This document shows, in pieces, positions 192 to 42,466 of a stretch of DNA of 64,000 nt. Positions within the stretch are counted from its first letter, which is position 1. Each line of letters starts with the position of its first letter. Made by a program: the position numbers and the translations under genes. The DNA is taken from NCBI RefSeq assembly GCF_963676685.1, contig NC_092348.1, forward strand, positions 71,052,001-71,116,000. The letters run 5' to 3'. The stretch comes from Mytilus edulis. Lineage: Eukaryota. The notes beneath the pieces were generated by a model, which searched no databases, had not been told where the DNA came from, and saw only the letters and a program-made list of their open reading frames with translations.

Positions 192-262
192 CTTCAATGT
201 TCAAATCGTCATAAACATATGCTTCGTTCTTTCGACCAAGATCTTCATAATGTGTTCCAGAG
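192..262 (-). CDS. Gene A exon 15, ITAM-like repeat 3 (SSGTHYEDLGRKNEAYVYDDLNIE)
   Basis: 71 nt, ttacag acceptor, GTGGGT donor, phase 2-1; paralog 28684-28754. Confidence 0.88.
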
Positions 263-3200
263 CTGTAAATATAAGCAAAAGTAGTTTATCGATTTTCAAG
301 TCTCCTAATAGATAAAGATTAACAAAATCAGAGTTACAAAAACAACTAAGAAAGTCTAATAGGACCGATAGTTCGTCGAAATGATAACCTCCTATATAAC
401 CATCAATCTACTCTCAGTCAAAATCATATTCGAGAATAGGACACACGAGGTAAAAGTACGTATGAGATGACTTTTTTACTACATAATTAAAAATCTACGA
501 CTGCAAAAACATGTCACTAATAAGGTCAGCAAAGACTAAGAGTGTCTATCGATTTTTTTAATGGAAGCGTAAAACGTATGTTGTCGATGTAAGATCCTCA
601 ATGCTCTTCAACTTTGTACTTCTCTGGCTTTATATATATATAAAAAAAAAGGAGATGTGGAATGATTGCCAATGAGACAACTTTCCACAAGAGACCAAAA
701 TGACACAGTAATTAACAACTATAGGTCACCGTACGGCCTTCAACAACTATATAACTAATTTTATATGAGCGTCGCTAATGCGTCTTATGTAGACGAAACG
801 CGTGTCTGACGTACTAAATTATAATCCTGGTACCTGTGATAACTTTTTTAGTATTTTTTGCTAAAACAATATTGCAATATATACTGTGAACATGCACCAG
901 CGTATTGTACCATTTGGAATAAGTGAAGGTCAAACAATTGTCTGTTACTGAGAACATCATGTTTCTCATAGATTATAGTTCTAAGTCTTTCATATATGTA
1001 ATTTTTTTAGAAAAAAATTAAGGTATGAAGCAGGCCTTCTTGTTTTAGTAGAATTCCTAATTTCACGTAAAAGTACATTGTAAGATATTTTATTCTTTAG
1101 ATATTTGGGAATGATTTGTTTAAATTTTCCATAATAGTTGTACAACAATAAATCGGCTACTAAGGGTGCACAATAAATAATCATAGGAATACCGACTGTC
1201 TGTGTGGAATATATATCCATCAACTGCAACAAATATTTTGTTGATAAGAAAATTCAAGCAGTTAAACATACCATTGTCGATGTGTTTGGTCTTTAGCATC
1301 ATTCCGGTACTTAAAAGTAATATTTTTAAAACCTTAACACGAAATATGCGGGTACGGTTCTATTTTTTTAAAAGCTGTTCAGAGTTACAATGTATTAGAT
1401 CTTTCAACTAGTCATCGGGAAAAGGGTGCAAACCAGCAAAAAAACAATAATATTATGATATCAATGCAAAATGTAAAATTATTCATGATTTTAAATTTTT
1501 CATTAAATATTAAGGGTTTGAATATAACTCGTCATAATATCTAATGTTGGACATCTTGAAGACCTTGAAATATATCGTTCGTTGTATGGATTTTCGTGAA
1601 GTAATGTAATCTACTATCAGGACGGGAGATTTTCATCTTGAATAATACTTAGATACCATGTCGTCAATGAATGGGACTACATGCCCAGCTATACAAATAA
1701 CTCATATTATTGTTTCACCTTCACCGTCTATGACGTAACACTCTCGCAACATTTAATTACTAGTTTGATTTATGCCAGTCTCTATGTCTCTGGATAAGAA
1801 ACGTCTTTTTTTACTAACTGTAGGGAACTACCAAAGATAGTAACCTACATATCTTTAAAAAAAAGTGTCAAATTTCCAAGGTCACTAATATTATGCTGGT
1901 ACTTAGTTGATAACATTGACACTTTTAGAAAAGAACAGAAATTTAATTTACTGAAAGAGAAATAGGGGAAACCGTGTTGGTCTCGGGGAAAAAGCACAAG
2001 ATAATTCATATTGAAACTTCATTCACTCAAATTTTAAAATGGTTCAAAGCAGGCCTTTAGATAAATTTATTGATGGTTAAACAAAATTAGAAATTACCTT
2101 TGCCCTCCGATTTTCTGTGACTCTGCAAAATAAAAGAAATAACATATGTTATCACATCATGCAGGTGGTACTAAAACTGGAAATGTCCATATTACAATTA
2201 TTATATTTATTGTATCGTAGAAATAAAGCAATTTAATTGCACACGCGCAAGATATTTATTCGAAAAGTGCTAGATCACGTCAGAAATTCAAAGAAATTGC
2301 CCTGTGAAAAAATTTAAGTTAAGTTTCGTCTCTAATTTACCTACATTGTATCTGGCTAGGTGGTTTCATGGCAGTCAGCTCTCGTCCAAGAGTGTGATGT
2401 AGAGGTTCAAATCGCAGGCCAGCTCAAACCAAAGACTTTAAAAATTATATATCCTTCTTTGATTATACATAGCGCGCGGTTATTAGGAGGAAGAGCAAAA
2501 CATGGTCAGCTCAGTTAGGTGACATTGAATGTTAAAAATCTGGTTCAGTGTTTCGGTTTATTACAAAGCTTGGTTTAACTTAGATATCACATAATCTTTA
2601 TATAATCCTTAATATGCATTGTATCTGCCACTGGACGTTAAACAGTCATCTTTCCATCCATCCTTCAAGCTTACCTCTTTATTGTATACATTTTCAACAT
2701 TAAATGAAACATTTTTTTTTCATGATATCTCTTGTTTTAATAAATTTCATAGAGATAAATGTGACATCACCTTTTTTAGTTAAATCTTCATAAACATTAG
2801 GGACATCTTTTAATCCAAGTTTTTCATAATTTCTTGAGGACCTGTAAAATAAATTTATACACATATTTGTTTTTCTGTAGTATAAATATATGCTTATATA
2901 TATGTTGACTGAATATCATGAAAATGATACAAACTAAATAGAAATTTAACACATGTATCGAGGTTCCGGTTCCAAGAATGATGCATTCGGAATAGGGACA
3001 AAAATGTTCTTCTTATACACTTTTGTTTTCTCTGAAAAAATCTGTTGACTTTGGTTCGAAACATGTTTTGTTCCGCCTCACTTGTATTCTTATATTTCTA
3101 TAACTATATAACATGAAGGGAAGAGCACGATAATGACAGAAAAGTATAAGCTCTGTCTACAGATTTTAACATGTGACCTTTATTTCAAGTCTTTAAATAA

Positions 3201-6200
3201 AACTGAAAACGCAAAAAAATGAAAGAGATAATATATTTTGATTGTATAATAATATACCTTAGATCTCTGTTTGTCTGTAGAGCTGTAAGTTACAAAATAA
3301 ATATAAAACTGCATTACAAAAATCATACAACAGGCATTGGTGTTTGTATAAAAGATGTCAGTGGCATGTACCGGATAACCCTTTTGTTTAAGTACAAAAG
3401 CATTTGAACAATTAAATAAAAAAACCAATCATTCATCAATGAAACAAGTAAAATCTTCACTTTTATTCTTTGATATTAAAGTAACGACAGATACAGAGAA
3501 GAACGCACAATTCAAACTATATAATTTAATTTATCTTTACCAGTTTAAGCACTTGGAATGTATTTCATTTTTTATTTTAAATAAATGCCAAACCATTCAC
3601 ATCGATTTTGTTACGGGAACCAACATATTACTCCTGAATCAGCAGAGCATATTGTTTTCAATCATTTTATGAAATATAAATTCAAATAACCTGACCTCAC
3701 CTTCATTGCTCAAATTGTCATAAACATTTGGGACATCTTGCAGACCAAGTGCCTCGTAATGTTTAGTCGGACTGAAACAACAATGAATACAACAGAAAAT
3801 ATAAAATCAGATATGTAAATAAAGGCAACAGTAGTATACAGGTGTTCAAAAGTCATAAATTGACTGAGGAAAAAAACAAATACGTGTAAAACTATAAAAG
3901 GGGAAAATGGAACAACATGAACACTTAAGTGCAACATCAACAAACACCAATATATATAAAAACGAAAACAACTGTAATATTCATGACTTTGTACCGGACA
4001 TTTTCATGATTTTAAGCTGGTTCGAGACACATTCTTATGCTGTTTCAGGTCACTAATTCTTTGAAAAGGTTACATAAAAATAAATTTTAATGTTATCAAA
4101 TTAAAAGACTTTGGTTACGTAGTATACAACCAATAAATGCGACTATCTTAACTAACTACCTATAGTAGTGATCACATTTTGACCGATCTATAAAAATTAT
4201 AGCTTTGTATCCTTGCTCAAGTACTTTTAGTATACGGACATAATGTGTACTTAGTTGTGCAGTGTTTGAATGTGCTAAATACTTTTCTTTAAATGGTGTT
4301 GGTATGACTAAATAGTTTCACAAAACACTGGTTAAACTACACCATGTAACGCATCTATACTATCGGGACCACAGTTGCTCGTTATTCAGTGTGGTCGGCT
4401 AAATTAGTATGGCGTTCATTATCACTGAACTAGTATATATTTGTTTAGGGGCCAGCTTAAGGACGCCTCCGGGTGCGGAAATTTTTCGCTACATTGAAGA
4501 CCTGTTGGTGACCTTCTGCTGTTGTTTTTTTCTATGGTCGGGTTGTTGTCTCTTTGGCACATTCCCCATTTCCATTCTCAATTTTATAAATGTAATAGAT
4601 TTTTCTATATAAGTTGTAATTCTGGTTAACTGGTTTAATCATCGTGTTTTGTTTTGTTTTAATTTTGTCACTTGAAAATAATTCATCTATTGAACAAAAG
4701 GAAGAAAATCTAGTTAAAAATGTCGTACCTTTGATCCCTGTTTTTGCTTGACGCTGTCAAAAGACAAATGCAATATGTCAATGCACAGGCATATCTAATT
4801 GACAGTTAATCTACATATAGCTATTACTGAAAGCTACGGATGTTAAAGATTGGTCACCAAAAACAATGATAAAATACATAATAGGTTTGAGAAATAATCT
4901 ATTCATCTTCGATGATTACAACGACAAGTGATTTTCTAAAAAAGTTCTAGACCCCATTATCATTCATTTGTCTATCGTAGTCTGTTTTGCTGCATGTTGT
5001 TTGTCTCATTCGTGTATGTTTATCTCTTTTTAGATTTTACTCCCCTTGCGACATATTTATATATAAGACTTATATATACTTCAGTGTATACAATGAAAAT
5101 GAATTAGAGGTGGGGTCTATGACTACATGTGATTCACTGAGAAAATAATTTACTGCATGGTTATGCGATTTTCTGCATTTATTGATAATACAATTATAAA
5201 CAATTGCAAAATTGTAAACATTTCATAAATTTGTCATCTATTCATACCATTTTGTGCACCGCTGCTTTTTTGAACTTCTTCATAGTTGTGTGTGTGATCC
5301 TCAGTATCAGTCTTTTCGAATTTGACTGTGCTAAATATGTACAAACATTATTGTAATTTAGTTTTATGTTTCTTGTTTATTACCACAACTTAGTAACATG
5401 TACGATTCGGCAAAGAATAAAATAAACTAGTGACAACTGATGCGCTTTAAGAAAAAAGTATGTGCATTCGTTCTTCTTTTTCTGAGGCGATATGAGGATT
5501 CCAAACACATAAAAAACAGATGAATCTTATTGAATGCTGATGTTCTTGGTGAGTATGTATACTAAATAATAAAATTTCTAGCTGGTAAATGTTCTATAAT
5601 ACGTACTAGCTGTGAAGAAATAGTTCACAAAAATATTGAACTAAATTTTGCAATACTATTTTTAACAATTATATGACTGTGTCAGTATATGTTATTTGCG
5701 GTTTGAAAATAAAACTATTAGACTTTTCTTGTCTACAGATCTTGATATTTATATTCATCAATTGTCTTTGTTAAATTGCAAACGCACTTACGCTTCACAT
5801 CGTTGATGCCCTGAAAAAAATATGTTCGTATAAGATGGATGTCAAATCCTTAGTAATATATTTTAATTTCTTAAGCCATCAGGACGAAAAAGGTTAACTT
5901 CTTATTCGTGACATTTGATTCGAGCGTCACTGATGAATCGTTAGTAAACGAAACGCTCGTCTTGAATAACAAATCGTAGTCTTCGTATCTATGGTCAATG
6001 TATACACCTTATCGCTACTGTAAATTCAGAAATTATTGCGAGGTTTTTATTATTGCGAATAATGCGACTGAGTTGTAAACGCATTAATTCAAACTCGCAT
6101 TTTGTAATATTTTAACTGAATTAAGCATGACTTTTCTCAAAATTGTAAAAATTAAAATCGCATTCAAGTGTAAAATGACAAAATCGCAATAATTAATGCA

Positions 6201-20460: not shown

Positions 20461-20469
20461 ACTTCCTGT
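20461..20469 (-). promoter_or_regulatory. Putative ETS site ACAGGAAGT upstream of gene A (GATA motif adjacent)
   Basis: About 37 nt upstream of ATG; same motif at same distance in gene B although flanks are divergent. Confidence 0.45.
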
Positions 20470-27150: not shown

Positions 27151-27206
27151 TCAGTTTCCCTGTGTCCATTGTTTTGAGTCGTTTTCATACACTTTATTTT
27201 CAGCGT
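27151..27206 (-). CDS. Gene B probable terminal exon (DAENKVYENDSKQWTQGN*)
   Basis: tatttcag acceptor, phase 1, YEN motif, TGA at 27151-27153, AATAAA at 27119-27124. Confidence 0.7.
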
Positions 27207-30200
27207 CTGAAATATATATAACATGTCATATAACAATCTTAAACTGTCTTTGCCAAATTTTGAGTCAATTTGAAAAGAAAGATAAATTCGCCGTCAACAT
27301 GAAACATAGTTCTTTTGACCTTATTTTCTGTAAATTAACCTGCCTATCATGAGAACAACTTTGTCTGAGGTGTAGCTGCATCTGTAGTTTCCATATGATT
27401 AAAAATTTATTAACGGAAAATTCATGAAAGTTATGTTATCAATCATTTTAGAAACTTCGTACTGAGTTGATTATACCCTCTTGGAAAAACAACTAATCAG
27501 CAGCGGAATTGAAACGGTTTGAAATAATAAACAAAATAATAATAAAAAAAAGTAAATGATTTGCAAATCATGATTTATTTCTAGTGGTTAACATTAATAA
27601 TATTACAATAATTGTAATCAGAATAGATAATTGATAGGAATTCTTGCAATTCCTAAAGTTTTTTTTTATTAAACTGCAGACTTACTTCAATGCCATTACT
27701 ATTGTCAAATATAAACGTCTTTCCTAATTCTTTACACAATACGTTCTAATAATTACATGATGTGCTTTAATTTTTTGCATATATGTGTTCTTTTAGCAAC
27801 CATAGAATACAATAGCTTTAGAAATACATTTTTTTTTTATCATAGATGACTCACCCTCATTTATTAAATCATCGTAAACAGTGGGGTTGTTTTTCAAACC
27901 AAGATCCTCATAATGTTGTGTCGGGCTAAAATGAAATATTAAGATGTATTCACTTAGATATTAGATATATTTATGTAATCACAATGTACTAGTTTGGTCA
28001 ATTGAATTGAAACTTTGCTTTGACAAAGATTTTATTAATTACATATAATCGAGTAACTGATTTTTTTTTATTGAAATGTTAACCATTGATAGGATTATTT
28101 TTTGTGGTTTATACTGAATGTTTTTTTGCAAAACCAATCCATTAAATCTTCTTTCTCAGAAATGAATTACAAATATTACCTATTAACTGTGGTTTCTCCG
28201 CAATCTGTAATGAATAATAATAAGAATGAAGCAAACAACATTTATTGTTGGCTTTAGATGAATTTGGCTTTTTATTTTAGGCATTTTTGACATATAGCTC
28301 TTCAACGGTTTCGGTACTTATACATCTTCGGATTTCTTATGTTTGGCTTTGAGCGTTCCTGATGAAGGTAAAATCCAGAAAAGCGCTTCGGACGTAAGAA
28401 ATTATTAAACGTGCTGTTTTTAATTTGTTATTGGAGAAAACAATTTAAACTTGATAAGAATTCGCCTGTTTAAAGTGCTTTCTAAAACTCACTTCAAAAA
28501 CATAGCATTCAAAAACAATGAAGAATTACATTCACAATACCAAGACAAGACCAATTCACTATTTGTTATCCTTTTTTGTACCATTTTTCAATTGCCAAAT
28601 TATAACTTCAAAATATGCATCAACAGTTTCAATTTATGTCTGTCATGACTATATAATTTAAATATACCCCAAAATCGTCCTACCTTCACCTTTCAAATCA
28701 TCATAAACATATGCTGCGTTCTTTCGACCAAGATCTTCATAATGTGCTCCAGAGCTGTTAATTAATGCAAAAATCTCATAGATTGAGAAGAAAATCAGTG
28801 AAACAAATAAAATTAGAGTATCGCATGAAATATAAAAGGACCGAGAGTTCGTCGACAGAATAAATTTCTGCGTATGCATAAGTCCTTTCTTAGTCATAAT
28901 CACATTCGGGAATATGACACACTAGCTATAGGTAAAATTGCGTACCATACGACTATTCTACTGTATTATGTTATATGACTGCAAAATATGTCGATAATAA
29001 GGTGAGATACAGACGTTATGGAATCGTTGATTGTTATGGAATAACCGTTTCACAAATGATATCGGATATGTTCCTTACGTCGTAACTACAATCCCCTTCC
29101 CTTTCATATATGTGACTTACCGAATTAGACTATTTACCGGATTGATTATAACATAAGCAACACGACGGATGCCACATGTGGAGCAAGATCTGCTTACCCT
29201 TCCGGAGCACCTGAATTCACCCCTAGTTTTTGGTGGGGTTCGTGTTGTTTATTCTTTAGTTTTCTATATTGTGTCATGTGTACTACTGTTTGTCTGTTTT
29301 TCCTTTTCTTTTTTGGCATGGCGTTGTCAGTTTATTTCGATTTATGAGTTTGACTGTCTATCTGGTATCTTTCGTCCCTCTTTTAGAATCATTTGGAACA
29401 TGTGAAGGTCGTACAACTGTTGGTTACTGCAATCATCAAGTTTGCATATATTTTAGTTTGAAGTCTTTCATATGTGTCATCATCGCGGAAAAGTCAAGAT
29501 AAGAAGCAGACCTCCTAGTTTTGGTAGAATTCTCAATTTTAAGTAAAAGTTCTTACGATGTTTGAGAATGTCTTGTTTCCATTATGCATAATAGTTGTAC
29601 AAAAATTATTCGGCAACTAAGGGTACACAATAATTGTCGGTGTGTTTGATTTTTGGCCTCAGTACGGCTATTAAAAGTAATATTTGACCTAAAATGAAAT
29701 TTACAGCTACAATTTTAATTTGTTAAAGAGCTGTTCAAAGTTACGATGTTTTCGATCTGTCCAAGTGCATCATAATGTTTTGATGCGCTGTTACATTTAT
29801 CAAAAGACTATAGAATAGATAATTTTGAATAAATGGTATACCTACTTTTTGGAATTTTGGATCCTCAATGCTCTTCAACTTTGTACTTGTTTGGTTTTAT
29901 TAATATTTTGATATAAGCGTCACTGATGAGTCTTATGTAGAAGAAACGAGCGTCTGGCGTACTTAATTATAATCCTGGTACCTTTGATAACTAGTACTAG
30001 TTTATTGCAAATACTGATAATATCTTTCTGTTATTATTGTATAGTCTTACTCCTAACTTAATATATTTGTCGGATTTTGATTGGCTAACACACGTTGTTA
30101 TTATACCCATAGCCTCAGATGTTGTTAACCCATATACTCGAACGTTGATTCCATGTACCCTGGGAAATGTCATGCGCATTTTCGATGGTTTTCCATGTAT

Positions 30201-33200
30201 TGAGTTCTGTAGATTATCCAGGATATCAGTTAGTAGATAAATCCACTTACGAATTTATCTTAATTAGTCAATCATTTGCAGTAAATTTAGGAAATGCATC
30301 ACTTGAATACCACATCGTTGTCAGTTTCACGGTCTCTGGATTTAAAACGTCTTATATTTGACTACCTGTAGTTATCTAACATATCTAGCTTCTTACATAT
30401 CTTTAAAAATGTGTCAAATTTTAAAAAAAAAAGCGTTTTAAAATGATAAAAAAGCTTTTACGTTAAAGTGTGTGCTCAAATTTATCAAATTTGGACTTAG
30501 ATCGGGGATAGGTTCGTTATCTACGTTCATATCCGTAGATATGGTACGATTATCGAATTGATATTTAAAAACAAAAGAAATTCAGTTTACTGAAAGAGAA
30601 AGTGGGAATAGTGTATGAATGTAAAGAAGTAGCAAATAATAAAACATCTTTATCTTTGTTCACTCAAATGTTAAAGTGGTCTAAAGCAGGCCTTTTAATT
30701 ATTCTTTTATTAATGGTTCAAAGAAATTAGAAATTACCTTGAATCTTCGTTTTCCTGTGACGCTGTAAAGTAAAATAAATAACGTATTGTATCAAATTCA
30801 GGTGTTACTTAAACTGAATATGCCCATATTTACATACGTCGTGTTCCTTAATATCTATTAAATCACAGAAATAAGGCAATTCAATTGCCGGCGCGCAGGA
30901 TAATCATACGAAAAGTGATAGATCACATAAGAAATTCAAAGGAACTTAGCCTGTTATAAAATTTAGATGATTTTCGTCTCTAATTCACCTCATTTCCTTG
31001 TTGGTCTCGTGGTAGCGTGCTCGCTTCGGTTAGAGTGACATTTAAGTTAAAACTGTGGCTCAGTGTTTCAGTTTAGTACAAATAGATATAAGAATATGTG
31101 GTATTAGTGCCAATGAGACAACTCTCCAAACAAGTCAGAATTAAACAAGTGAACCATCATAGGTAAAAGTACCGTCTTCAACACGGAGCCTGGTTAATCT
31201 AAATTAAAATATTTAACGTCAAACTGACAGATTTTTATTGAATAATACAAGGGATATAATTTCCTCTGTTCCATTGCTCAGTGGGAAACAATTTTCTAAA
31301 TAGTACCCTGTAATGCAGACCAATCAAAAATCGATAATTCAAAGGACAATGAAGTTAATCTACATCAATAAATCAAAGACAATCATCATGGCCTTTATTT
31401 TGGCCTCAAAACAACGTTAAGTACGTAGACTGTCAATAAAAAAGAAAATGTCTTGCTTCCAATTTGGTTTTTTTTGTAATAGCTGTTCCGTTGGTAAGTG
31501 AGTGACGTAATCGTTAAGTAGTTTCAAAATAAAATTTTACAGTAAAAGACAATGATGATAGAACATTCAGTGTGATAAATTTAATTACACATAGTTGAGA
31601 GAGTGATAGAGCAGATTGCATGGTATCCCTCGGAAAAGCATTTACAACCTCGCCTTCTCCTCAGTTGACAATGTATCATCGCTATAACAATCTGCTCTAT
31701 CACCCTCTCAGCTTTGGTTATTTATATAATATCACATAATCATACTCTTGTCCCTAATACGCGTTATATTTGCCACCAGACGTTAAAGATTCATCTATCC
31801 TCCCATCAATCCAGCTTACCTCATTAATTGTTTTTTTTTCAACAATAAACGAAATATATATATATTTTTCTTTTTTGTAAATAATATCTTTTGTATTGAA
31901 ACATTTTATAAAGATAAATGTGACATCACCTTTATCAGTTAAATCTTCATAAACATTAGGGGCATCTTTCAAACCCAGTTTTTCATAATTTCTTGAAGAG
32001 CTGTAAAAATAAATAAACAAACATGTTTGCCATTATGTAGTACAATATATGCTTCTATGTTTACCGAATATCGTAACTATCAGAAAACTGAATACAAATT
32101 CAATTAATTTATTTACATTTTTCAAGTATAATTCTGGAATTCAGAAACTCTATTCACATATATTTTTCTTAATGCTTTGCGTTTATCTGTTGACTTTGGT
32201 TCGTTTTTTGTTTATTTAGCCTCGATAAATTTCGTATATTCACACAACATTATTATATTTAACTGTTAAAATATATTTGTATCTATATGCCATATAACGA
32301 TGGAGAATGCTTAAAGGGAGAAAAAGGATAGAGACGAAAACATAAGTTCGGTCTACAGAAGTACATCCTTTTTCAAGTCTTAAAAAAAACGTACAAAAAA
32401 GAATGATATATAAAATGTTTCGATAAAATAGTACCATACCTTAGGTCTTTGTTTGCATATGGTGCTGAAAAATACAAAACAAATAAATCACTTCATTACA
32501 TGTAACATAAAACAGATATGGTTACTTTAATAAAAGAGGTCAGTGTTACGTACCTGATTAACCGTATTTTCTAGTTCTTTAGTACAGAAGCATTTGAACA
32601 ATCAAATAATATCGATCTATTATCAACAAGGAAAAACTCATCAAGGCTATGAAGTATCTTGAACTGGCAAGAAATATTTGTAAACAAGAATGTTCGGTGT
32701 TCAAAAATTCACTTTTAATCTCAGATAATAAAGTAGCAGCGGATATAGAGAAGAACGCGCAGTTCAAAATAAGTTATTTCTGTCAATTTCATATATAGAG
32801 CATTTGAATGAAATGCCTTTTTATATTGAATAAGTGAAGAATTATATACATTGATTATTGTGTGTTGACTAAAATATTTCTTTTGAATAAGCACAGCAAT
32901 TTTTTATCAATTGTTTTCAGAAAAATAGATTTAAATACCATTGATCTCACCTTCATTGCTCAAATTGTCATAAGCATTTGGGACATCTTGCAGACCAAGT
33001 GTCGCATAATGTTTCGTCGGCCTGAAACAAAAATGAATACAACATAAAATACAAAATGAAATGTAAGTCTTTGTGTTGTTTCAGATTCCTCAATTTTTGA
33101 AAAAGATAACATACAAATAAACTTAATATTATCAAATTTAAACACTACTGATAAAAGCACATTGTAAGAAATATTTGTTTGTCTTCATAGTATTCGACCA

Positions 33201-36200
33201 AAATACGTCACTACCTTAACTGCCTACAAATAGTTACTGTAGTGATCACATTTGGACCAAGTTGTCCAAATTAATAGCTTTTGTCCTTGCTCAAGGATAT
33301 GGACATACATTGTGTGCCTCGGTTGTACAGTTTGCGAATGTGTGATATACTTTTTCTACATATAGTTTTAATAGGTTCACAAAACAAAATGATTAATCCA
33401 CAGCACGTAGCTCCCCTAAACGTTATTAAGTGTTCGGACATTAAAGGAATATACTTTTCAATATCAGTGGTAATTTCTGTTATCTGCTGTAAGTACTATT
33501 TTCTTTTTAAATTGAGCAACAGGAAAACTATTCATCCGTTTTAAAAAGGGAGGATATCTAATTAAAAATGTCATACCTTTGATCTCTGTCTTTGTTTGAA
33601 GCTGTTAAAACACAAATGCAATATTTCAATGCAAAACAAAATTTAACTGACAAACAATTTACATTTAGCCTTATTGTACGTCAGGGATGTTAAGAGTTGT
33701 CACTCAAAAGGTTGATAAAGATACAGTATAGGTAAAATAAGCCACCATCATCATCTATAATAGCAACTGTCTTTGCATAGTTGATAAGTGTACCTATACT
33801 GAATACAACTTTATAGTATCTATTCCTCTTCGATTGAAACAACTACATAAAACCTTTATAAGAGTTCTAGTTCCCATACAAAATTTACTTGTCTATTGTA
33901 CACTGTTTCGTTGCATGTTGTTCGCGTATTGTCCTCTCTTTAAAGTTTTTACTATCCTTGTGACTAATTTGAGGACAAAACATGTACAGTTTAGTGTGCA
34001 CAAATAATGAGAGTGTAATCTATGACTGCGTGTGATTTAATGGTTAACTTTTTACTGATTTGCTGCGTATGCTGTTTTGAGAATTTATTGATAATTCAAT
34101 TATAAACGATTGCAAATTTATAAATATGTCATAAATTTGTTTATTTTATTCATACCATTTTGTGTACCGCTACTGTTTTGTACTTCGTCATAATTGTGTG
34201 TGTGATCATCAGAATCAGTCTTTTCAAAGGCCACTGTGCTGAAAATGTACAAACATTATTTTAATAGACTTTTGTGTTTTTTGTTTTTACCACAACTAAG
34301 TAACATGCATGATATCTAGTCTACAAAGAATAAAATAAACTAGTGGCATACAACTGATGCATTTTTTAAAAAGTGTATGTGAATTCTTTTTTCTTTTTGT
34401 TTGACGATATGAGGTTTCAAAACAAAACAAAAACAAACGTCTCTTATTTGTTCTTGGTCAATATGTATCTTAAATTATAAAATTTCTAATTAATATATGT
34501 TTTATAATACGTACTAGCTGTGACGAAATAGTTCACAAAAATGTTGAACTAAATAAGGCACAGCAATTGTTTGACAATTTCATGAATGTGGCAGTATATA
34601 TTTTACGCGGTTTGAAAATAAAACTATTAGACTTTTCTTGCCTACAGGTATTGATATTTTTCATCATCATTTGTCTGTGTTAAATTTCAAACGAACTTAC
34701 GCTTCACATCGTTGATGCCCTGAAAAATGTATAAGATGGATGTGAAATCCTTAGTAATATATTTTAATTCCTTAAGCAATCAGGACGAAACAAGTTAGCT
34801 TCTTCATTCGTGATATTTGATTCGAGCGTCACTGTTGAATTGTTTGTACAAGAAACGCGGGTCTACTATAACAAGTTTAAGTCCTCCTGATATCTTTGGT
34901 CAATGTATTTTATATGAAAATAAAACTATATAAGATAGGTGAAAGATGCCAAAAACTCATTCAAACTCATCAGTTGAAAAAAAACCTGACAATGCCATGG
35001 TAATACAAGATAAAGGTCAAAAGATAGAGATAGATGTTCTGCTACCGACGCTATTTTCGGAACCAATTAATGGGTAAATAGAAAAGCCGTATTTGGCTCA
35101 TCTGTTTTGAATTTTTGGTGGCAAAGCTATTCAACTTTATACTTCTTTGTATTTCTAACTTTTTATTATCTGAGCGTCACTGATGAGTCTGATAAAGACG
35201 AAACGCGGGTTTGGTGTATCAAATTATAAGCCGGTTACCTTTTATAACTGTATCAGCGTTACCTATTGTTTCGGTTGGGTTTTTCTTCTGGTACTTGCAT
35301 TGTTGTCACTTTGCAACGTGCCGATTTAAATTTCGTCTATGTGTAAAATTTGTTAGTATATCATTACAACCTTCGTCCCTCATTATTCTTCATGAGTCTC
35401 GATTAATTTTAGATGCTAACCATGTAGACAGAACAAAAGCTAAAATGATGATTGGCACGCTACGTAATCGTTTGATAAAAACATTTACTTTGTTTGATGT
35501 ATAAAAAGCACTATATATTAAGCATCACAAAAGCCGACTTGAACAAGTCTTACCTTTCCGTCTCTTAAAGATTATCAAGACCAAAACCACCATTAAAACA
35601 ATTATAGACACCAGACTCCCGCACACAGCACCAATAATTACACCTGATGACATTGTTTCTGGTTTTATTGTTGAAGCTTAAACAAATTGAAAAAGATATT
35701 ATCAAAGAATCACATTAATGTTCACGTTATATAGGGTACATGTATATATCCTATGACTTTATCTAAACTAACAGTTTGCAAATAATGTACAGGTTACAAT
35801 GTATATGACAAGGTGTTACTTTGATGAAATTTCGGAACACGATGTAATCTTAAATTCTTCAAGATATTTTGTTCAATGAATTTCCACAATTTTCAATTGC
35901 CAACAGGTCTTCAATGCAACGAGAAATTCCCGCACCCGGAGGCATCCTTCAGCTGGCCCCTAAACAAGTATTTACTTTGACCCTTTGACAAAAAATTTCA
36001 AAAAATTAGAACCAATCAATTTATCAGAAAAATTACACTGGTTTTATAGCAGTTTGAGACAAACACTAATTTTGATCATTGAGAAGCTTCATATTCCCTT
36101 AACAAACAACATATTTAAAACTTTTAGCTGATTTTACAGAGTTATCTCCCTGTAGTGTTCGGTTCCAACTTAAACGGGTTTTGATAAATGACCTGTTTTA

Positions 36201-39200
36201 GGCGATTTTGGCTGTTTTCATAATAGTACAGAACTCAAGGAATTAAAATCATTATCGTATTAATCAATATAATCAATAAGTTAATAAAGTCAACTGAATA
36301 TTTGTTTAGGAATAAACTCTGCAGCTTTATTAATACAAGTAATTTATTTTCAAAAATGGTGCGAAATAGCACTTTAATTTGATCTTTGCAGGTGAAATGA
36401 TAATCGAGCGATGCATTTCAACATTATGTGTTAAAAAAAAGTCGACCAATTTTGATTTCTATATTCCTGCATTAAAAATACTAAATTCAATGCTAATAAT
36501 TATCGAAAGCCAAAACTTCACTATATACATGACCATATCGATTCAACTGAAACGAAAGTACATTCCACTTCAATTAGCCAAATACGCATTATCAAATTCG
36601 TTCAATTTGTAACTACGAAAAATTCGTACATCAAAAAAAAAGTTTTTCTTTTACTAAATGCATATGCTCTCTAGGTTATAGTGATATTGGTTGAATAAAA
36701 TGTACTTTTTGTTGATGAATGTGTTACATTCCGGTATGAACAAACTACCTAAAAATAATAAGAAGAAACTAGTTGATTTCGTTAATTTTGATTATTTCTT
36801 TTAAAGATATAGTATGAACTTTATTAATCTATATCCATAGAATAAGTTAATTATGTCTTACTTGATAGTCCCAACACTACAGTGTGTTCTACAGATTGCC
36901 CAAAACCATTTTCCAATATTAACGTATAGTTAGTGAAGTCCTCCTTTGTTAAATCATTCACTGTTAAAATTGATTTATAGCCATTAACTGTTACAGTCTT
37001 TCCATGAAAAACATCTTCAACCTCGGCCGAGGATTCCGAAACAAAAAATTTAGTTGATGTTTGAATCTGTTTTCCTTTATTGAACCAAGCATTGTAGATG
37101 AACTTAGGAACACTAAACACGTGAGCAACTATGTCAACATGTTTCCCAATCTCTCCATACTGTATATTTCTTTCATCATTGTCTGCAGTAAATACTGGTT
37201 GTGCTGTATAAAGAAAATAGGTATCAAAGACTCATTAGTGACGACAACATAAAAAAAATGATGGAGCCTCTGAATGTATGATAATCCTGTAATTGTGTTT
37301 ACCCAGCATAAGAACAATCACTAACCTTTCTTGTTGTCTTAGAACGTGAACGATAGTGGACCTATATATGCAAAATGATATGCTAGTTTTGTATATTGTG
37401 TTTTGTAGTCTGTAACGATTTTTTTTTTTGTCTTTTAACTATAAACATTGATTGCAATTAGCAAATCCTTGCATAGCCGTTTTAAAAGATGAGTATCAAT
37501 TTCAAGATAATGAAATAAATTGTTGTTCTTCAGTTGAGTATAATATTTAAAAAACAATTATACGCGAGCAGTTAGAAGCATTTGCAATACCAACTTTTTT
37601 CATGAAATATCAACTATACATACCATAAACAGTAATTTTAGCCGCTCCTTGGCGCTTCTCCACACCATCCGTTCCTTGAATATCATTACTAACTGTACAC
37701 ACATATTCACCGTTGTCTTGATATCTCAATGATATTGGAACTACAGGCAGTGTCAAGATAGTGTCCCCGTCCAGTTCCCGAATAATTCGTCCATGCAAAG
37801 ACCTATGCTGCCACTTATAAAATGTGTATGTATCGGGATAACCATCAGCTGTACAATTTATTGTTCGTGTTAGATCTGTCATTTCATAGGTGACATTAGA
37901 AACTGAAACATCTGGAGGAACTGTAAGACATTAAATTGAAATTCGAAGAACCTATTACACCACTTTCAAATGTTGTTCGTATGAATCTAACACACAGTTT
38001 TAATATACCTTCGAATACCATTCTTTATCAAATAGTTTGTTCCTATATTCTATTACATCCTCTATGACGCAAAATTTAGTGATTGATGTTTCGAATAAAC
38101 TAGTTAAAAATTCGAATGAATTCCTTTAACCTATTTATTCTTGTAACGATTTGTAATACACTTGTTTTATAAAATTGTTCGAAACATGTTTACTATCACT
38201 GCCTGTATTTTTAAATTCAACACACAAACTCATAAAACATACAAATGTTATTTTGTTTCTGTTTAACAATCTTCCTTTTCTAATCACGCGTACATAGGCT
38301 GCCACAAAAGTATCATGCTACCATAAATACAGTGACTGATAACACATTCATAACTACTAAAAGAAAACAGAATGAGACAACTCTTCACAAGAGACCAAAT
38401 GACACAAAAAGTGTCAACTTTAGGTCACCGTTTACTAGGTTTAATGGCTGTTTATGTTAGCAAGAACGTTCCATTCGTGATTTTTCTTTTAACAAATATT
38501 ACAATAACTCGTCATTATGGATTAAATTTGAATGATCTGTAAAGTTTTTACAAATTAAAAAATATCGAACATATCAAATTAAAGAACTGTATTGTTAAAT
38601 AACTTACATCGTACAAATAAATTTATCTGGTTTGAAAATCCTCCTATTGTGTTGTTCGCTGTACATATTATCGGTTGTAAGTTGAATTTCCTGTCCACCG
38701 TATATGTTAACGTGGAGGTCACCGTGAAAGTTTCATCAACACCTTGAGTTTCATGTGATGATGCTGTACTTGTTACATCAGTTTGGCCTATCGTCCACCA
38801 AATGGTGGCAGCAGGACGGCTTCCATTTGATGTACAAGAAATAGAAAATGGTACCATTTCTAATGTATTTACAAGTGATGCACTGAACACTGGCATTAAA
38901 GGCATTACTGAAATTGATAAAGTGTAAGATTCATCATTGACTTTTAACAAAAATCGATACTCATATCTGCCTGTACAAGCATCTGCTTATGACCAGGTGT
39001 TCTGCATATCAGTTATGTTTAATACGGACTACAAGTCACAATTTGACGCTTTTTGATGTGTGGACGAAGGTAACGAGTCAACAGAAAAGTGTCATAGTGT
39101 GTAATCAAACAACTGATATATCAGGGTTTCAGTATGATATGTGTCTGATAACTTATTTAAAGTATTGTATATGTTATTATGTGTATCTGGAGATAAAACA

Positions 39201-42200
39201 ATAGCATTATAAGACGAATTTATAACATGTATAAGGATTCAGGGGTTCCAAGATCAAACCATCTGTCGTATTTTGAAATGTTTTTTTTTATCGAAAAGGA
39301 AAGTAAAAGTAACTATATGTATGTAAAACTTATATATGTTCTAAAAGTTGAAATTGTAAAATGTTCAATATAAAGAAGTAAAAACACTACCCGAATTTGT
39401 AGAATTCTTTATCAGAAGATATTCCATTGTGATTCGCCACTGATGGGGAGTGTATTTTAACTTTATTCATTGAAGCGAACTAAAATTAAGAAAAATCTTA
39501 TTTCAAATTTGCGAAATGATTGTTAACAGAATATTAGTTTAATATCGAATATGTCATGTATGTCTCACCAAAATATGGGCAATGTTTAAAATAGTTGCAT
39601 TGAAAGAAAAACACCTACATGGTTTTCAACCTTTGTAATGGTAATAACGCATATCTAGGTATCTTTCATAGTTCAAATTACTTTTCTAATCTTTGTAAAA
39701 TAGCTATATATCCCTTTAAAGTGTTAAATATCTCGAGTTTTTCATACAATATTACTTTCCTTCAAGTAGCAACCTCAAGGAACTAACCCATAGGGTTGAC
39801 AATTTTGTTTATTTATTACTTCAATGTTCCATAATTGCATACTATTCCTTATTGAATATTGGCACATATAATAAATGATGAATTAATCAAAATTAACAAA
39901 ACAAAAAAGTAATTGAAAGTGTTTGCATTGATAAATCAGCACAAAAATATCAAAATATCAATATAAAAAGTAACCGACTTCTAAATGTAGTACTTTGTGC
40001 TAACAATTAAAATTTGATTTAAATGTTATTCTTCGTCATTTTGTTCGAGATTGATCAGGCATATTCAGATAGCCTATTATAGAAATAAATTGATACCTAC
40101 GATAAAGGTTTATTACAGCAGTAGTTTTCATTGGAATATCCAAAGCGTCACTGTTTGCTTCACATGAAACATGTGTTGTATCATAAAGTCTCGGTATGTT
40201 TCGCAAAATGTATCGCAACTCTTGGACACCAGTGTGGACAGTTGTTTCAAGAACTACAAGAGATAAAGTAGGAGCAGGAATTCCCCCAGTAGCTACGCAT
40301 TCAATGAGTAGATCCTGTCTTTCTGTACCAGTCAATATATTATCTGTTAAGGCGTTTCGAATTATTAAACTTTTTGGAAGCTCTAAAATAGAACGATTAA
40401 TTAATTTGTGTGTACATGCAGTTTCATATGTAACTGGTTGAATGTAACTACAAAATGCTTAAATATAAATGTATATATATAGAAACCACATTTTCTATTA
40501 CTGTATTTATAATTGTATGATTCATTTCCACCAACTCAAATGTTGTGCAATGTTATTCATATGTGCTAGTTGGTATGCCCCCGATTAGTGTCTTTGTATT
40601 TAATATTTTATGAATCAAGATTTACACTTTAATGTGTTATGATTGCCAATAAAACTGTCAACCAGAGACCTAAACCCGGACGTCGATTTTAAACGGTTTG
40701 TTAAGTACTTTAGTTTATTAACTATCATGTTGATTACATAAGAAATCACATAGAAAGTCAATGTCCCTCTCCCTAAGTCAAACATGACTGGCTGTTTTGT
40801 TCAAGTTCCGTTTTGGTCGTATAAATATTCAAATATGTTTTAATTATCGACCTTCAATATTCTCTTTAGTGTTACTGAGATAAGAGAAATCCAGAACGCC
40901 CGTGGACGCACGTTTCTTTGAATATGCATTCATATTGGAATTTAATGGAATTTAACTATTTGTTTTATTCAAAAAGTATTTAAATTTGGATTGTTTATCT
41001 AACTTTCTGTTAAAAATTAAAATCGAGAAAAAAAATGACAAAACAAAACTGTAGCTATACATTAGTAAACAAAATAAACGTAAGGATTTCGTTTGACAAA
41101 TTTGTAGTGCTGTTTGATTACCAAATTATTGAAAGGTGTTTGTCCTTTAAGTTATATTTCCTAATTTATTTGACTGGTGAGCTGTACTATCTGTTTATTT
41201 TCCCTTTAGTTTTTCGCTGCTTTTAATTATGTCTGATACTAATGATACTAATGATATTTTCCCAACAAATACCCCAGTGACATGAACCATGCATTTTGCT
41301 CACCATACAAAGTCAACTGTAAGAAGTATTCGTCAGTAATTCCTCCTCTGCACCTGTAAATCCCCTCATCAACAGGTTGAGTGTTCACTACATGTAATCT
41401 GTAGTACAGCCCAGTATTAGGATTGGCTGATGTTTTGTACTTTGTATCATTAATAGTTACATACTGATTAGCGATTACAGACCATCCCTCAATCCCATTT
41501 TTGGACCATATCAGTCTTGCATTTTCAATACTACACTGTAGAACTGACTCGTGTCCTCGTTTAACATATTGTTGAAAGGGATCCAATACTGTACCTGTAC
41601 CAGTTGCATATACGTCTGTTAAAAATATACCTACAAAGTACAATAATCATCTGATGGGAGTGAAATGTGGAAATGTTATAATTGTTAGTCATATAATTTC
41701 TTGTTGGTTTGTACACAGGTTCTGTGGAGTTCTTTGTGTCATTCATGAATGATATTGTTTTAAATAATAATTTTGCATTTTTCAAGTTTAGTTCTCACTG
41801 TTGAAATGTGTGTTTGGTTTTTATTTTGTTGAAATGTTGCTTCATCCGCACTAATTTCGTTGCCATTTTTCGGATGGTATGATGAACAATAAACAAACTG
41901 GTCAAAAGAGAGAAGATAAAGTAGTATACATTAGAGAAATCATCTCGAAGTGCATTCGCTTAAGCCGTAAACATATGAATGTCTACCACAAACCTACACA
42001 CGCGGGTTACTACATATATCTTTGTGTTTACATTATGAACACCTGAAGTATTGACATTTAAAAAAAAACATTTAATTTGTTGACACATATTGATTTCATA
42101 ATTATATTGATAAATGATGCATATATACATTTTATATGAATGAATTTCGGAAGATTTGAAGTCCTAAAAAATATCTGAAAACAAAAACTTCACTTTTTTT

Positions 42201-42427
42201 AAATGCGTATTTCATGTTATTCAATTTTGACCAAATTAAGGCAAAAGTAGTTTACCGATGTTTAACTCTCTTAAATCGATCAAAAAGACAAATCAAGGTT
42301 ACAAACATAAGATAATTGTAGTCCCATAATATGTCGAACTCAAAAAGGAGCGAGCTCGCCTGAATGGTACATACTTACTGCACACCATTAAAAGTAAACC
42401 AGTCAAATAGGAGATTGCAAAATCCAT
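27151..42427 (-). CDS. Gene B (complete, about 753 aa): Ig-superfamily type I receptor, leader + 5 Ig domains + TM + 4 ITAM-like repeats + terminal YEN motif
   Basis: 18 exons: 42379-42427, 41304-41630, 40101-40382, 38608-38907, 37624-37920, 36862-37203, 35554-35676, 34701-34719, 34156-34238, 33577-33601, 32951-33021, 32440-32464, 31930-32000, 30738-30762, 28684-28754, 28180-28204, 27855-27925, 27151-27206. Total 2262 nt, open throughout. Confidence 0.92.
27855..27925 (-). CDS. Gene B exon 17, ITAM-like repeat 4 (SPTQHYEDLGLKNNPTVYDDLINE)
   Basis: 71 nt, catttttag-type acceptor, GTGAGT donor. Confidence 0.87.
28180..28204 (-). CDS. Gene B exon 16, 25-nt spacer micro-exon (DCGETTVN)
   Basis: ttacag / GTAATA, phase 1-2. 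Confidence 0.75.
28351..28395 (+). ncRNA. Minimal hammerhead ribozyme motif, second subfamily
   Basis: GCGUUC-CUGAUGA-AGG(uaaaau)CCA-GAAA-A(gcgc)UUC-GGACGU; palindromic loop 3. Confidence 0.6.
28684..28754 (-). CDS. Gene B exon 15, ITAM-like repeat 3 (SSGAHYEDLGRKNAAYVYDDLKGE)
   Basis: 71 nt, taacag / GTAGGA. Confidence 0.88.
29018..29382 (+). repeat. Dispersed repeat, possibly a retroelement 3' fragment
   Basis: Inverted copy at about 15520-15760; absent from paralogous intron in gene A. Confidence 0.65.
29916..29960 (+). ncRNA. Minimal type I hammerhead ribozyme motif (stem II mismatch)
   Basis: GCGUCA-CUGAUGA-GUC(uuaugua)GAA-GAAA-C(gagc)GUC-UGGCGU. Confidence 0.7.
30738..30762 (-). CDS. 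Gene B exon 14, 25-nt spacer micro-exon (ASQENEDS)
   Basis: tttacag / GTAATT. Confidence 0.8.
31930..32000 (-). CDS. Gene B exon 13, ITAM-like repeat 2 (SSSRNYEKLGLKDAPNVYEDLTDK)
   Basis: 71 nt, ttttacag / GTGATG. Confidence 0.88.
32440..32464 (-). CDS. Gene B exon 12, 25-nt spacer micro-exon (APYANKDL)
   Basis: tttttcag / GTATGG. Confidence 0.8.
32951..33021 (-). CDS. Gene B exon 11, ITAM-like repeat 1 (RPTKHYATLGLQDVPNAYDNLSNE)
   Basis: 71 nt, ttgtttcag / GTGAGA. Confidence 0.88.
33577..33601 (-). CDS. Gene B exon 10, 25-nt spacer micro-exon (ASNKDRDQ)
   Basis: ttaacag / GTATGA. Confidence 0.8.
34156..34238 (-). CDS. Gene B exon 9, cytoplasmic, single YDEV motif
   Basis: 83 nt, ATVAFEKTDSDDHTHNYDEVQNSSGTQN. 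Confidence 0.85.
34701..34719 (-). CDS. Gene B exon 8, 19-nt micro-exon (GHQRCE)
   Basis: tttttcag / GTAAGT. Confidence 0.82.
35172..35217 (+). ncRNA. Minimal type I hammerhead ribozyme motif (best-preserved copy) in a dispersed repeat
   Basis: GCGUCA-CUGAUGA-GUCU(gauaa)AGAC-GAAA-C(gcgg)GUU-UGGUGU: core, stem II, short stem III, stem I pairing. Confidence 0.75.
35554..35676 (-). CDS. Gene B exon 7, transmembrane exon
   Basis: 123 nt, TSTIKPETMSSGVIIGAVCGSLVSIIVLMVVLVLIIFKRRK. Confidence 0.92.
36862..37203 (-). CDS. Gene B exon 6, Ig domain 5 (cysteine-less)
   Basis: 342 nt phase 1-1; about 84% aa identity to gene A exon 6. Confidence 0.92.
37624..37920 (-). CDS. Gene B exon 5, Ig domain 4
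   Basis: 297 nt; about 89% aa identity to gene A. Confidence 0.95.
38608..38907 (-). CDS. Gene B exon 4, Ig domain 3
   Basis: 300 nt; about 85% aa identity to gene A. Confidence 0.95.
40101..40382 (-). CDS. Gene B exon 3, Ig domain 2
   Basis: 282 nt; about 68% aa identity to gene A. Confidence 0.93.
41304..41630 (-). CDS. Gene B exon 2, end of leader + V/I-type Ig domain 1
   Basis: 327 nt; LQC..W..DEGIYRC; about 57% aa identity to gene A. Confidence 0.95.
42379..42427 (-). CDS. Gene B exon 1, signal peptide (MDFAISYLTGLLLMVC)
   Basis: 49 nt, ATG to GTAAGT, phase 1, hydrophobic. Confidence 0.87.
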
Positions 42428-42466
42428 ATGCACGTATAAAATTCTTCTTTGCAATCTATTTTTTAA

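What the first reader, a model, noticed from the sequence alone, without database searches (positions are those of the whole stretch)
27855..33601. Each ITAM is a two-micro-exon cassette (25 nt + 71 nt = 96 nt) repeated in tandem
Seen: all seven visible ITAMs in both genes sit on 71-nt phase 2-1 exons, each preceded by a 25-nt phase 1-2 spacer exon. Lengths are invariant although spacer sequences have diverged. Any 25-nt exon can join any downstream 71-nt exon in frame, whereas skipping a single exon shifts the frame. Inference: ITAM number (0-4) could be tuned by alternative splicing or by cassette duplication between paralogs or alleles, acting as a signal-strength dial.
Basis: partly seen in the sequence, partly recalled or inferred. 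Interest (0 to 1): 0.82.

Follow-up and report, generated by a model that had tools for sequence, protein, structure and literature searches.

The report
Mussel receptor tail built from ITAM exon-pairs
In blue-mussel immune-type receptor genes, each signalling motif (ITAM) really is encoded by a fixed pair of tiny exons (25 + 71 bases) repeated four or five times; the number of pairs has changed between gene copies and species, but nothing shows that splicing varies it.

Summary
The window is Mytilus edulis chromosome 5. Gene A on the minus strand (42427-27151) is RefSeq XP_071175231.1. My 18-exon model translates exactly to that protein.

- **Gene A tail:** it holds four 25-nt (phase 1>2) + 71-nt (phase 2>1) exon pairs, at exactly the coordinates given.
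- **Tandem paralogs:** gene B and two copies outside the window (C and D) follow the same rule. That makes 17 of 17 ITAM exons at 71 nt and 17 of 17 spacer exons at 25 nt, all flanked by AG/GT.
- **Transcripts:** spliced RNA contigs and reads show the predicted 71-25-71 junctions.
a sixth module of the same phases but different size (19 + 83 nt, one YDEV tyrosine), and a terminal VYEN exon.

- **Evolutionary change, supported:** gene D has five ITAM pairs and genes A-C have four. Gene A still carries a decayed relic of the fifth. The M. trossulus model lacks the first pair, and M. coruscus has five.
- **Splicing change, not supported:** no cassette-skipping junction appeared among the listed ones. 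The RefSeq isoforms of gene D differ only in an Ig exon.

The closest published relative is oyster CgIgR (five Ig domains, one ITAM, binds Syk). Vertebrate ITAMs are split inside the motif, so this exon layout is different. I rate it a new variant of a known kind, of moderate interest.

The parts
33577..33601 (-). Gene A spacer exon S1, 25 nt, phase 1>2 (SNKDRDQ)
   Evidence: junction 33020>33576 in RNA contigs
32951..33021 (-). Gene A ITAM exon I1, 71 nt, phase 2>1 (YATLGLQDVPNAYDNL)
32440..32464 (-). Gene A spacer exon S2, 25 nt
31930..32000 (-). Gene A ITAM exon I2, 71 nt (YEKLGLKDAPNVYEDL)
   Evidence: junctions at 31930 and 32002
30738..30762 (-). Gene A spacer exon S3, 25 nt
29756..29833 (-). 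Decayed relic of a fifth ITAM exon (I2' of paralog D). The acceptor and the first 32 nt remain (exon part about 29787-29756, YDAL kept). The second tyrosine and the donor are lost.
   Evidence: blastn against gene D exon, 73% over 90 nt; sequence read
28684..28754 (-). Gene A ITAM exon I3, 71 nt (YEDLGRKNAAYVYDDL)
   Evidence: junction 28204>28684
28180..28204 (-). Gene A spacer exon S4, 25 nt
   Evidence: junctions 27925>28180 and 28204>28684
27855..27925 (-). Gene A ITAM exon I4, 71 nt (YEDLGLKNNPTVYDDL)
   Evidence: junction 27925>28180
27151..27206 (-). Gene A terminal coding exon, entered in phase 1 (..DAENKVYENDSKQWTQGN, then stop)
   Evidence: paralog alignment; exact match to P0119
34701..34719 (-). 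Gene A micro-exon S0, 19 nt, phase 1>2
34156..34238 (-). Gene A exon X0, 83 nt, phase 2>1, single tyrosine (YDEV), not an ITAM
35554..35676 (-). Gene A transmembrane exon, 123 nt, phase 1>1; no charged residue in the helix; followed by KRRK
36862..42427 (-). Gene A leader exon plus five Ig-domain exons (D1 to D5), all phase 1>1
   Evidence: Pfam ig, C2-set_2, Ig_3 and I-set hits on four of the five Ig exons; D2 had no hit; exon table
4729..4753 (-). Gene B spacer exon S1, 25 nt
3701..3771 (-). Gene B ITAM exon I1, 71 nt
3258..3282 (-). Gene B spacer exon S2, 25 nt
2771..2841 (-). Gene B ITAM exon I2, 71 nt
2098..2122 (-). Gene B spacer exon S3, 25 nt
192..262 (-). Gene B ITAM exon I3, 71 nt. 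S4 and I4 lie 129 to 451 nt left of the window start.
5248..5810 (-). Gene B S0 (5810-5792, 19 nt) and X0 (5330-5248, 83 nt, YEEV)

Best explanation
These are the cytoplasmic-tail exons of a tandem family of Mytilus edulis genes. Each gene encodes a single-pass receptor with five Ig domains.

The tail is a string of two-micro-exon modules. Each module starts and ends in phase 1, the same phase class as the Ig and TM exons.
- One 19 + 83 nt module carries a single YDEV/YEEV tyrosine.
- Four or five 25 + 71 nt modules each carry one complete ITAM (HYxxLG-x7-YxxL).
- A last exon carries VYEN.

The array arose by tandem duplication of the exon pair before the genes themselves duplicated. ITAM exons at the same position in different paralogs are 86-100% identical, against 58-75% between positions.

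Since then, pair number has changed by genomic gain or loss of whole 96-nt pairs, which keeps the reading frame. ITAM exons are under purifying selection. Spacer exons drift at about the intron rate but keep their length because of the frame. As far as the data show, the pairs are spliced constitutively.

Inferred, not shown: on ligand-driven clustering a Src-type kinase phosphorylates the ITAM tyrosines. Each doubly phosphorylated ITAM then docks a Syk-type tandem-SH2 kinase, as reported for oyster CgIgR. Four or five ITAMs in one chain would raise signal gain, as ITAM multiplicity does for the T-cell receptor zeta chain.
For: **Exon sizes, phases and splice sites**
- Established.
- The spliced translation matches RefSeq XP_071175231.1 (P0119) exactly.

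**Spliced transcripts**
- RNA contigs and raw RNA reads show junctions at the predicted exon ends, with 25-nt inserts between 71-nt exons from several paralogs or alleles.
- A 2831-nt Logan contig encodes D4 through the five-ITAM tail without interruption (P0131). In gene A the same exons span over 10 kb of genome.

**Array structure and change in pair number**
- Positional orthology is shown by the identity matrix.
- Gene D has five pairs and gene A keeps a relic of the fifth.
- A 32-residue period and 3 to 5 ITAMs are seen across Mytilus species.

**Selection**
- ITAM exons are 89-94% identical between paralogs, 150-nt intron flanks about 79%, and spacer exons 74-82%. For the closest pair, B-C, the figures are 94%, 88% and 93%.
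- Y5, L8, G9, Y17 and L20 are invariant in 17 of 17 exons.

**Domains and functional analogy**
- The Ig domains have Pfam support.
- Oyster CgIgR has five Ig domains, a TM and an ITAM with the same x8 spacing and a YxxLG start, and it recruits Syk and activates ERK (PMC6994640).
- The effect of ITAM multiplicity in TCR zeta is described in PMC4850346 and PMC2396812 (listed; abstracts only were read).
Against: - Phosphorylation, Syk binding, ligand and expressing cell type are all untested here.
- I did not identify a Mytilus Syk. The SH2 scan shows loci with two SH2 domains close together, but I did not link them to a kinase domain.
- Sequence homology to CgIgR was not tested, because I had no CgIgR sequence.
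- YxxL motifs can also serve as endocytic sorting signals.
- Length invariance is not absolute outside M. edulis. Predicted proteins of M. coruscus and M. galloprovincialis show periods of 31, 33 and 34 residues.
- Several counts from other species rest on automatic gene models. Such models can drop a frame-neutral exon pair without penalty, for example P0003 and perhaps the missing I1 of M. trossulus P0001.
Confidence: 0.75

Rival explanations
1. Splicing dial. Hemocytes include or skip whole 96-nt pairs, producing receptors with 0 to 4 or 5 ITAMs and so tuning signal strength cell by cell or on challenge.
For: Every whole-pair skip preserves the frame. One M. galloprovincialis RefSeq isoform (X2, P0123) ends just after S4 and lacks I4 and the C-terminus. 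An older M. edulis model (P0003) joins X0 to S2 and I3 to the last exon.
Against: No pair-skipping junction is among the 15 listed junctions in four runs. RefSeq gives single isoforms for genes A and C, and gene D's three isoforms have identical tails. P0003 is a poor model: it lacks the TM exon and contains a piece read out of frame. The X2 isoform is a truncation, not a 96-nt skip, and I4 in that gene has already lost its second tyrosine. All splice sites of the micro-exons look strong.
Confidence: 0.12
2. The repeated YxxL pairs are not activation motifs. They act mainly as tyrosine-based sorting or endocytosis signals, or as docking sites for other SH2 or PTB proteins, in an adhesion-type Ig protein. 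RefSeq names these proteins NCAM-like or Kirre-like.
For: YxxL also fits the YxxPhi sorting consensus (established knowledge). The ectodomain hits generic adhesion-type Ig families. There is no functional data for Mytilus.
Against: Both tyrosines, both leucines and the exact 12-residue Y-to-Y distance are invariant in 17 of 17 exons. That fits the two-pronged ITAM better than single sorting signals do. The oyster receptor with the same architecture and ITAM spacing binds Syk.
Confidence: 0.1
3. The 25/71 regularity has no functional meaning of its own. It is simply what remains of fairly recent tandem duplication, with selection removing only frame-breaking indels.
For: Spacer exons evolve at about the intron rate. 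In-frame length changes of plus or minus 3 to 6 nt appear in other species' models. The S0/X0 module has the same phases but other sizes.
Against: This is compatible with the best explanation rather than opposed to it. Cassettes at different positions are only 58-75% identical, so the duplications are old, yet lengths are still identical in 34 of 34 M. edulis exons.
Confidence: 0.3

Closest known systems
Oyster CgIgR (Crassostrea gigas; PMC6994640)
   Same: A bivalve single-pass receptor with five extracellular Ig domains, a TM and its own cytoplasmic ITAM. The ITAM (YTELGQCDPETPYEKL) has the same YxxLG start and x8 spacing as the mussel cassettes. It binds bacteria, dimerises, recruits Syk and activates ERK.
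   Different: CgIgR has one ITAM and the mussel genes have four or five, plus a YDEV module and a VYEN end. The paper gives no exon structure (0 occurrences of 'exon'). Sequence homology was not tested here.
TCR zeta / CD3 zeta (CD247) and Xenopus laevis FcR gamma
   Same: Several ITAMs in one chain, each ITAM tied to a repeated two-exon unit. X. laevis FcR gamma gained a second ITAM through an extra exon (PMC4536121). ITAM multiplicity affects signal potency (PMC4850346; abstract only).
   Different: [quoted passage not shown] Here the whole ITAM sits on one 71-nt exon and the second exon is a spacer. Zeta is a ligand-blind adaptor with a charged TM residue and a tiny ectodomain. The mussel protein has five Ig domains and an uncharged TM. 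This points to an independent origin of the array.
Hydractinia Alr family (bioRxiv 10.1101/2022.03.04.482883)
   Same: Tandem clusters of invertebrate Ig-superfamily single-pass receptors. Each Ig domain and the TM is on its own exon, some members have ITAMs in the tail, and some are alternatively spliced.
   Different: Alr splicing swaps whole TM and tail ends. No repeated ITAM exon-pair array is described. The tails are too diverse to align. It is a cnidarian family unrelated in sequence.

Membership tests
ITAM-bearing immunoreceptor (functional class) | YxxL/I-x6-8-YxxL/I motif | tested here: met
   17 of 17 exons encode YxxL-x8-YxxL
ITAM-bearing immunoreceptor (functional class) | The motif lies in the cytoplasmic tail, C-terminal to a transmembrane helix | tested here: met
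   A 26-residue hydrophobic stretch followed by KRRK lies upstream of the array, after the five Ig domains. Topology is inferred from the sequence, with no dedicated predictor.
ITAM-bearing immunoreceptor (functional class) | Tyrosines are phosphorylated and bind the tandem SH2 domains of Syk/ZAP-70/Shark | not testable with these tools
   Known only by analogy with CgIgR-CgSyk. The SH2 scan did not identify Syk.
Vertebrate 'classical ITAM' gene unit (CD3, CD79, FcR gamma, DAP12, TCR zeta) | [quoted passage not shown] | tested here: not met
   The whole ITAM lies inside one 71-nt exon, and the boundaries fall 13 nt before and 10 nt after it. The rule is quoted from PMC4536121.
Vertebrate 'classical ITAM' gene unit (CD3, CD79, FcR gamma, DAP12, TCR zeta) | Acidic residue in the TM for pairing with a ligand-binding chain | tested here: not met
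   The TM sequence GVIIGAVCGSLVSIIVLMVVLVLIIF has no charged residue.
CgIgR-like bivalve Ig receptor | Five Ig domains + TM + ITAM tail | tested here: met
   There are five phase 1-1 Ig-size exons. Four have Pfam Ig-type hits and D2 has none. The TM and ITAM tail follow.
CgIgR-like bivalve Ig receptor | Sequence homology to CgIgR | not tested
   I had no CgIgR sequence by reference. Only the ITAM printed in the paper could be compared by eye.
Ig-superfamily adhesion molecules (the RefSeq names: NCAM1-like, Kirre/roughest-like) | Ig domains of C2, I-set or Ig_3 type | tested here: met
   C2-set_2 E = 1.6e-10, which clears Pfam's curated cut-off, as does the generic 'ig' family on D1. Ig_3 and I-set hits fall just below their cut-offs. 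The names are automatic, and no Fn3 domain is present as in NCAM.

The most novel reading that the evidence does not exclude
ITAM-pair number in this family is a variable trait within mussel populations. Haplotypes would carry different numbers of 96-nt pairs, in line with the heavy presence/absence variation of Mytilus genomes. Alternatively, or in addition, hemocytes would skip pairs under some conditions. Either way, individual mussels or cells would set the gain of a pathogen-sensing receptor by ITAM count, a natural counterpart of tuning ITAM number in engineered CARs.
Probability: 0.15. Interest if true: 0.75.

Novelty: new variant of a known kind. Interest (0 to 1): 0.5.

Why it matters
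ITAM signalling was long treated as a vertebrate speciality, and in bivalves only the single-ITAM oyster receptor CgIgR has been studied.

These mussel genes put ligand-binding Ig domains and four or five ITAMs in one chain. To my knowledge that exceeds the three of TCR zeta, though this comparison is recalled and was not checked.

The exon layout differs from the split ITAM found in all vertebrate classical ITAM genes. That argues the multi-ITAM array was invented independently.

The phase-1 exon-pair module explains how ITAM number could rise and fall without breaking the gene. Paralog D, the relic in gene A and the differences between species are worked examples.

The family offers a natural system for asking how ITAM multiplicity sets signal gain outside vertebrates.

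Tried and rejected
- **Whole-genome pattern scan.** I used 23-residue exon translations instead. These found the four arrays plus weak single-ITAM exons elsewhere on chromosome 5.
- **Fetching 18 more stretches around those weak hits.** Cassette counts for the wider family could not be made.
- **Loci L022 and L025.** They show one 74-nt ITAM exon of the same phase and no clear partner micro-exon.
- **Word search with the tail of P0003.** The aim was to catch short transcript-derived fragments with skipped pairs. It returned only P0003 itself.
- **Search for Syk.** The SH2 family scan lists loci with two SH2 domains close together but does not identify Syk. A paper search for Syk in Mytilus gave nothing specific.
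- **Relics of the fifth pair in genes B and C.** None was found.
- **P0003 as evidence of pair skipping.** Rejected, because the model lacks the TM exon and contains an out-of-frame piece.
- **Joined models.** The only joining was an in-script translation check against P0119, which printed a match flag and the exon table.
Full report
**Where we are.** The window is G000 contig C5:71052001-71116000 of a 1.37-Gb genome at about 31% G+C. Homology searches returned RefSeq proteins of Mytilus edulis that lie on a contig of 97,338,103 nt, which is the length of C5. The species is therefore the blue mussel. Everything discussed here is on the minus strand.

**Checking the observation.** A six-frame scan for Yxx[LI]-x6-9-Yxx[LI] found seven closely related motifs among many random ones. 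Four are at 33008, 31987, 28741 and 27912 (gene A). Three are at 3758, 2828 and 249 (gene B).

All seven have the same frame around them: an AG acceptor, 13 nt, the 48-nt motif, 10 nt and a GT donor, which makes 71 nt. Upstream of each lies one well-formed 25-nt exon with a pyrimidine tract, a (c/t)ag acceptor and a gta donor.

I extended the sequence to 194 kb with the fetch from genomes. This showed two more tandem paralogs to the left of the window, genes C and D, and the fourth pair of gene B just outside the window.

Across the four genes, 17 of 17 ITAM exons are 71 nt and 17 of 17 spacer exons are 25 nt. All 34 are flanked by AG and GT. With the AG and GT offsets imposed, the 194-kb scan on both strands gave only one unrelated hit. 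Chance is therefore excluded.

**Gene model.**
- Open frames upstream of the tail encode five Ig-size domains. Pfam gives ig, C2-set_2 (E = 1.6e-10), Ig_3 and I-set hits on four of them and none on D2.
- A transmembrane exon follows.
- A profile-free search of 1.84 billion representatives with the D5 exon, given by reference, returned full-length relatives. A word search with the tail region of one of them then returned nine Mytilus proteins.
- One of the nine, P0119 (XP_071175231.1, 'neural cell adhesion molecule 1-like'), is gene A. My chain of 18 exons translates to it exactly over 753 residues.

The exon table is:

| Exon class | Length | Phase |
|---|---|---|
| Leader | 49 nt | 0>1 |
| D1 to D5 (Ig) | 282 to 342 nt | 1>1 |
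| TM | 123 nt | 1>1 |
| Spacer exons S1 to S4 | 25 nt | 1>2 |
| ITAM exons I1 to I4 | 71 nt | 2>1 |
| Last exon | 56 nt coding | enters in phase 1 |

Between the TM exon and S1 lie a 19-nt exon and an 83-nt exon with the same phases. They encode one tyrosine (YDEV in gene A, YEEV in gene B) and no ITAM. The last exon encodes VYEN.

The joining was done only inside a script, to compare with P0119.

**Transcript evidence.** The single read-laying run covered 27720-33700 with one raw RNA-seq run and three runs held as contigs.
- Gene A's own junctions appear at the predicted exon ends: 27925>28180 (I4 to S4), 28204>28684 (S4 to I3) and 33020>33576 (I1 to S1).
- Other contigs and reads join 71-nt exons across 23 extra letters. 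Together with the shared AG these make 25-nt spacers of paralog type: B/C-type S3, D-type S2, D-type S3 followed by the start of the fifth ITAM exon, and a B-like S2.
- The 25/71 rule is thus seen in transcripts of several family members.
- The runs labelled 'RNA?' also contain unspliced pieces, so depth says little about expression level.
- A Logan contig of 2831 nt encodes P0131, which runs from D4 through a five-ITAM tail to the stop. The same exons span over 10 kb in gene A, so that contig must come from spliced RNA.

**How the array evolved.**
- ITAM exons at the same position in different paralogs are 86-100% identical. Exons at different positions are 58-75% identical. Spacers behave likewise. 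The four- or five-pair array is therefore older than the gene duplications.
- Gene D has an extra pair. Its ITAM exon, I2' (YDALGQKEAPNVYNEL), lies between I2 and I3 and is followed by an extra spacer (HYENRSQ).
- In gene A the intron between S3 and I3 still holds the acceptor region and the first 32 nt of that exon (29833-29756). The second tyrosine and the donor are lost.
- The A/B/C lineage therefore lost one 71 + 25 nt unit. Its S3, which once spliced to I2', now splices to I3.
- Between paralogs, ITAM exons are 89-94% identical and 150-nt intron flanks about 79%. Spacer exons are 74-82% identical, which is intron-like. For the closest pair, B-C, the figures are 94%, 88% and 93%.
- Y5, L8, G9, Y17 and L20 never vary. 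The ITAM exons are thus constrained in sequence, while the spacers are constrained mainly in length.

**Number across the family.**

| Source | ITAMs |
|---|---|
| M. edulis genes A and C | 4 |
| M. edulis gene B (counted on the DNA) | 4 |
| M. edulis gene D, all three isoforms | 5 |
| M. edulis, older assembly, D-like protein | 5 |
| M. coruscus | 5 (first period 31 residues) |
| M. trossulus | 4 (I2, I2', I3, I4; no I1) |
| M. galloprovincialis, first gene | 4 (one period of 33 residues) |
| M. galloprovincialis, second gene | 3 full ITAMs; its I4 has lost the second tyrosine |

The period is 32 residues nearly everywhere. Counts from other species rest on automatic models, which can skip a frame-neutral pair, so they are weaker than the genomic counts in M. 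edulis.

The tail search found relatives only in Mytilus. That search works by shared words and within a length window, so absence elsewhere is not proven.

**Splicing dial.** I found no support for it.
- The 15 listed junctions are all between neighbouring exons.
- Genes A and C have one RefSeq isoform each.
- The three isoforms of gene D differ only at the acceptor of Ig exon D2.
- One M. galloprovincialis isoform ends right after S4. That is a truncation, not a 96-nt skip.
- P0003, which joins non-neighbouring tail exons, is a faulty model.
- A word search for short tail-bearing fragments found nothing further.
- The test is weak, because expression was low, contigs hide rare forms and 19 junctions were not displayed.

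**Likely mechanism.**

Shown: a five-Ig single-pass protein with an uncharged TM helix, so there is no sign of pairing with an adaptor. Its tail runs YDEV module, then 4 or 5 ITAMs at a 32-residue pitch, then VYEN.

Inferred:
- Clustering by ligand would lead a Src-type kinase to phosphorylate the ITAMs.
- Each ITAM would then bind the tandem SH2 domains of a Syk-type kinase. This is reported for oyster CgIgR, which has five Ig domains and one ITAM with the same YxxLG-x7-YxxL form, and signals Syk to ERK (PMC6994640).
- By analogy with TCR zeta, several ITAMs in cis would raise potency (PMC4850346 and PMC2396812; abstracts only).
- From general knowledge of SH2 specificities, not tested here, YEEV/YDEV resembles the Src-family SH2 optimum and YEN the Grb2 SH2 consensus. 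The tail may thus also recruit its own kinase and an adaptor.
- I did not identify mussel Syk.

**Comparison with known systems.**
[quoted passage not shown] TCR zeta has three such units, and X. laevis FcR gamma gained a second ITAM with an extra exon (PMC4536121).
- The mussel array is analogous in being built from repeated two-exon units. However, the boundary positions differ, since the whole ITAM is on one exon. The protein is also a ligand-binding receptor, not an adaptor. It works like zeta but is not a member of that family.
- Hydractinia Alr genes are another invertebrate Ig family with ITAM tails and tail-swapping isoforms. No exon-pair array is described for them.
- Paper searches found no description of multi-ITAM receptors or of this exon layout in Mytilus. 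The genes exist only as automatic RefSeq models with adhesion-molecule names.

**Earlier notes of this scan.** One note covers the same gene as a 'single-chain Ig receptor with four tandem ITAM-like motifs' (s1-839796). Its span agrees with my model. Other notes report ITAM tails in unrelated mussel receptors.

**Verdict.** The structural observation is correct and precise. This is a new variant of a known kind of receptor, of moderate interest.

Noticed in passing
window 34701-34719 and 34156-34238 (gene A); 5792-5810 and 5248-5330 (gene B): An extra two-micro-exon module (19 + 83 nt) with the same phases as the ITAM pairs. It carries a single YDEV/YEEV tyrosine and is conserved in all Mytilus homologs seen.
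   Followed up: yes
window 27151-27206; gene D at chr C5:70993105-70993175; gene B about 1.5 kb left of the window: The last exon encodes VYEN. Gene D has a TAG inside its last ITAM exon and so ends before that exon. Gene B has a 1-nt insertion in the last exon that cuts the tail short.
   Followed up: partly
L022 (C5:70651895-70654957) and L025 (C5:70507885-70510947): Two nearly identical loci, 0.4 to 0.55 Mb away, each hold a single 74-nt ITAM exon (YEALGTQDKPNVYEEL) of the same phase 2>1. More weak hits lie at 69.4 to 71.4 Mb on C5, which points to a wider family cluster.
   Followed up: partly
window 28920-29520, 29720-30120, 30920-31320: Intronic dispersed repeats reach depths in the thousands in the RNA-like runs, with many loose ends. 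These are high-copy mobile-element-type sequences inside the tail introns.
   Followed up: no
gene D, Ig exon D2 (outside the window; proteins P0126, P0118, P0127): The three RefSeq isoforms use different acceptors within the D2 Ig exon, removing 13 or 43 residues of the domain.
   Followed up: partly
window 44389-44774: A tandem array of a roughly 40-nt unit (six overlapping 99-nt copies), upstream of gene A.
   Followed up: no
window 14680-20500 versus 40380-42430: The D1 domain is much more diverged between genes A and B than D2 to D5 are. This shows in tblastn identities to P0001: D1 aligned to genes B and C only, while D3 to D5 are 79-85% in every paralog. It agrees with other first-reader notes on this window.
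   Followed up: no
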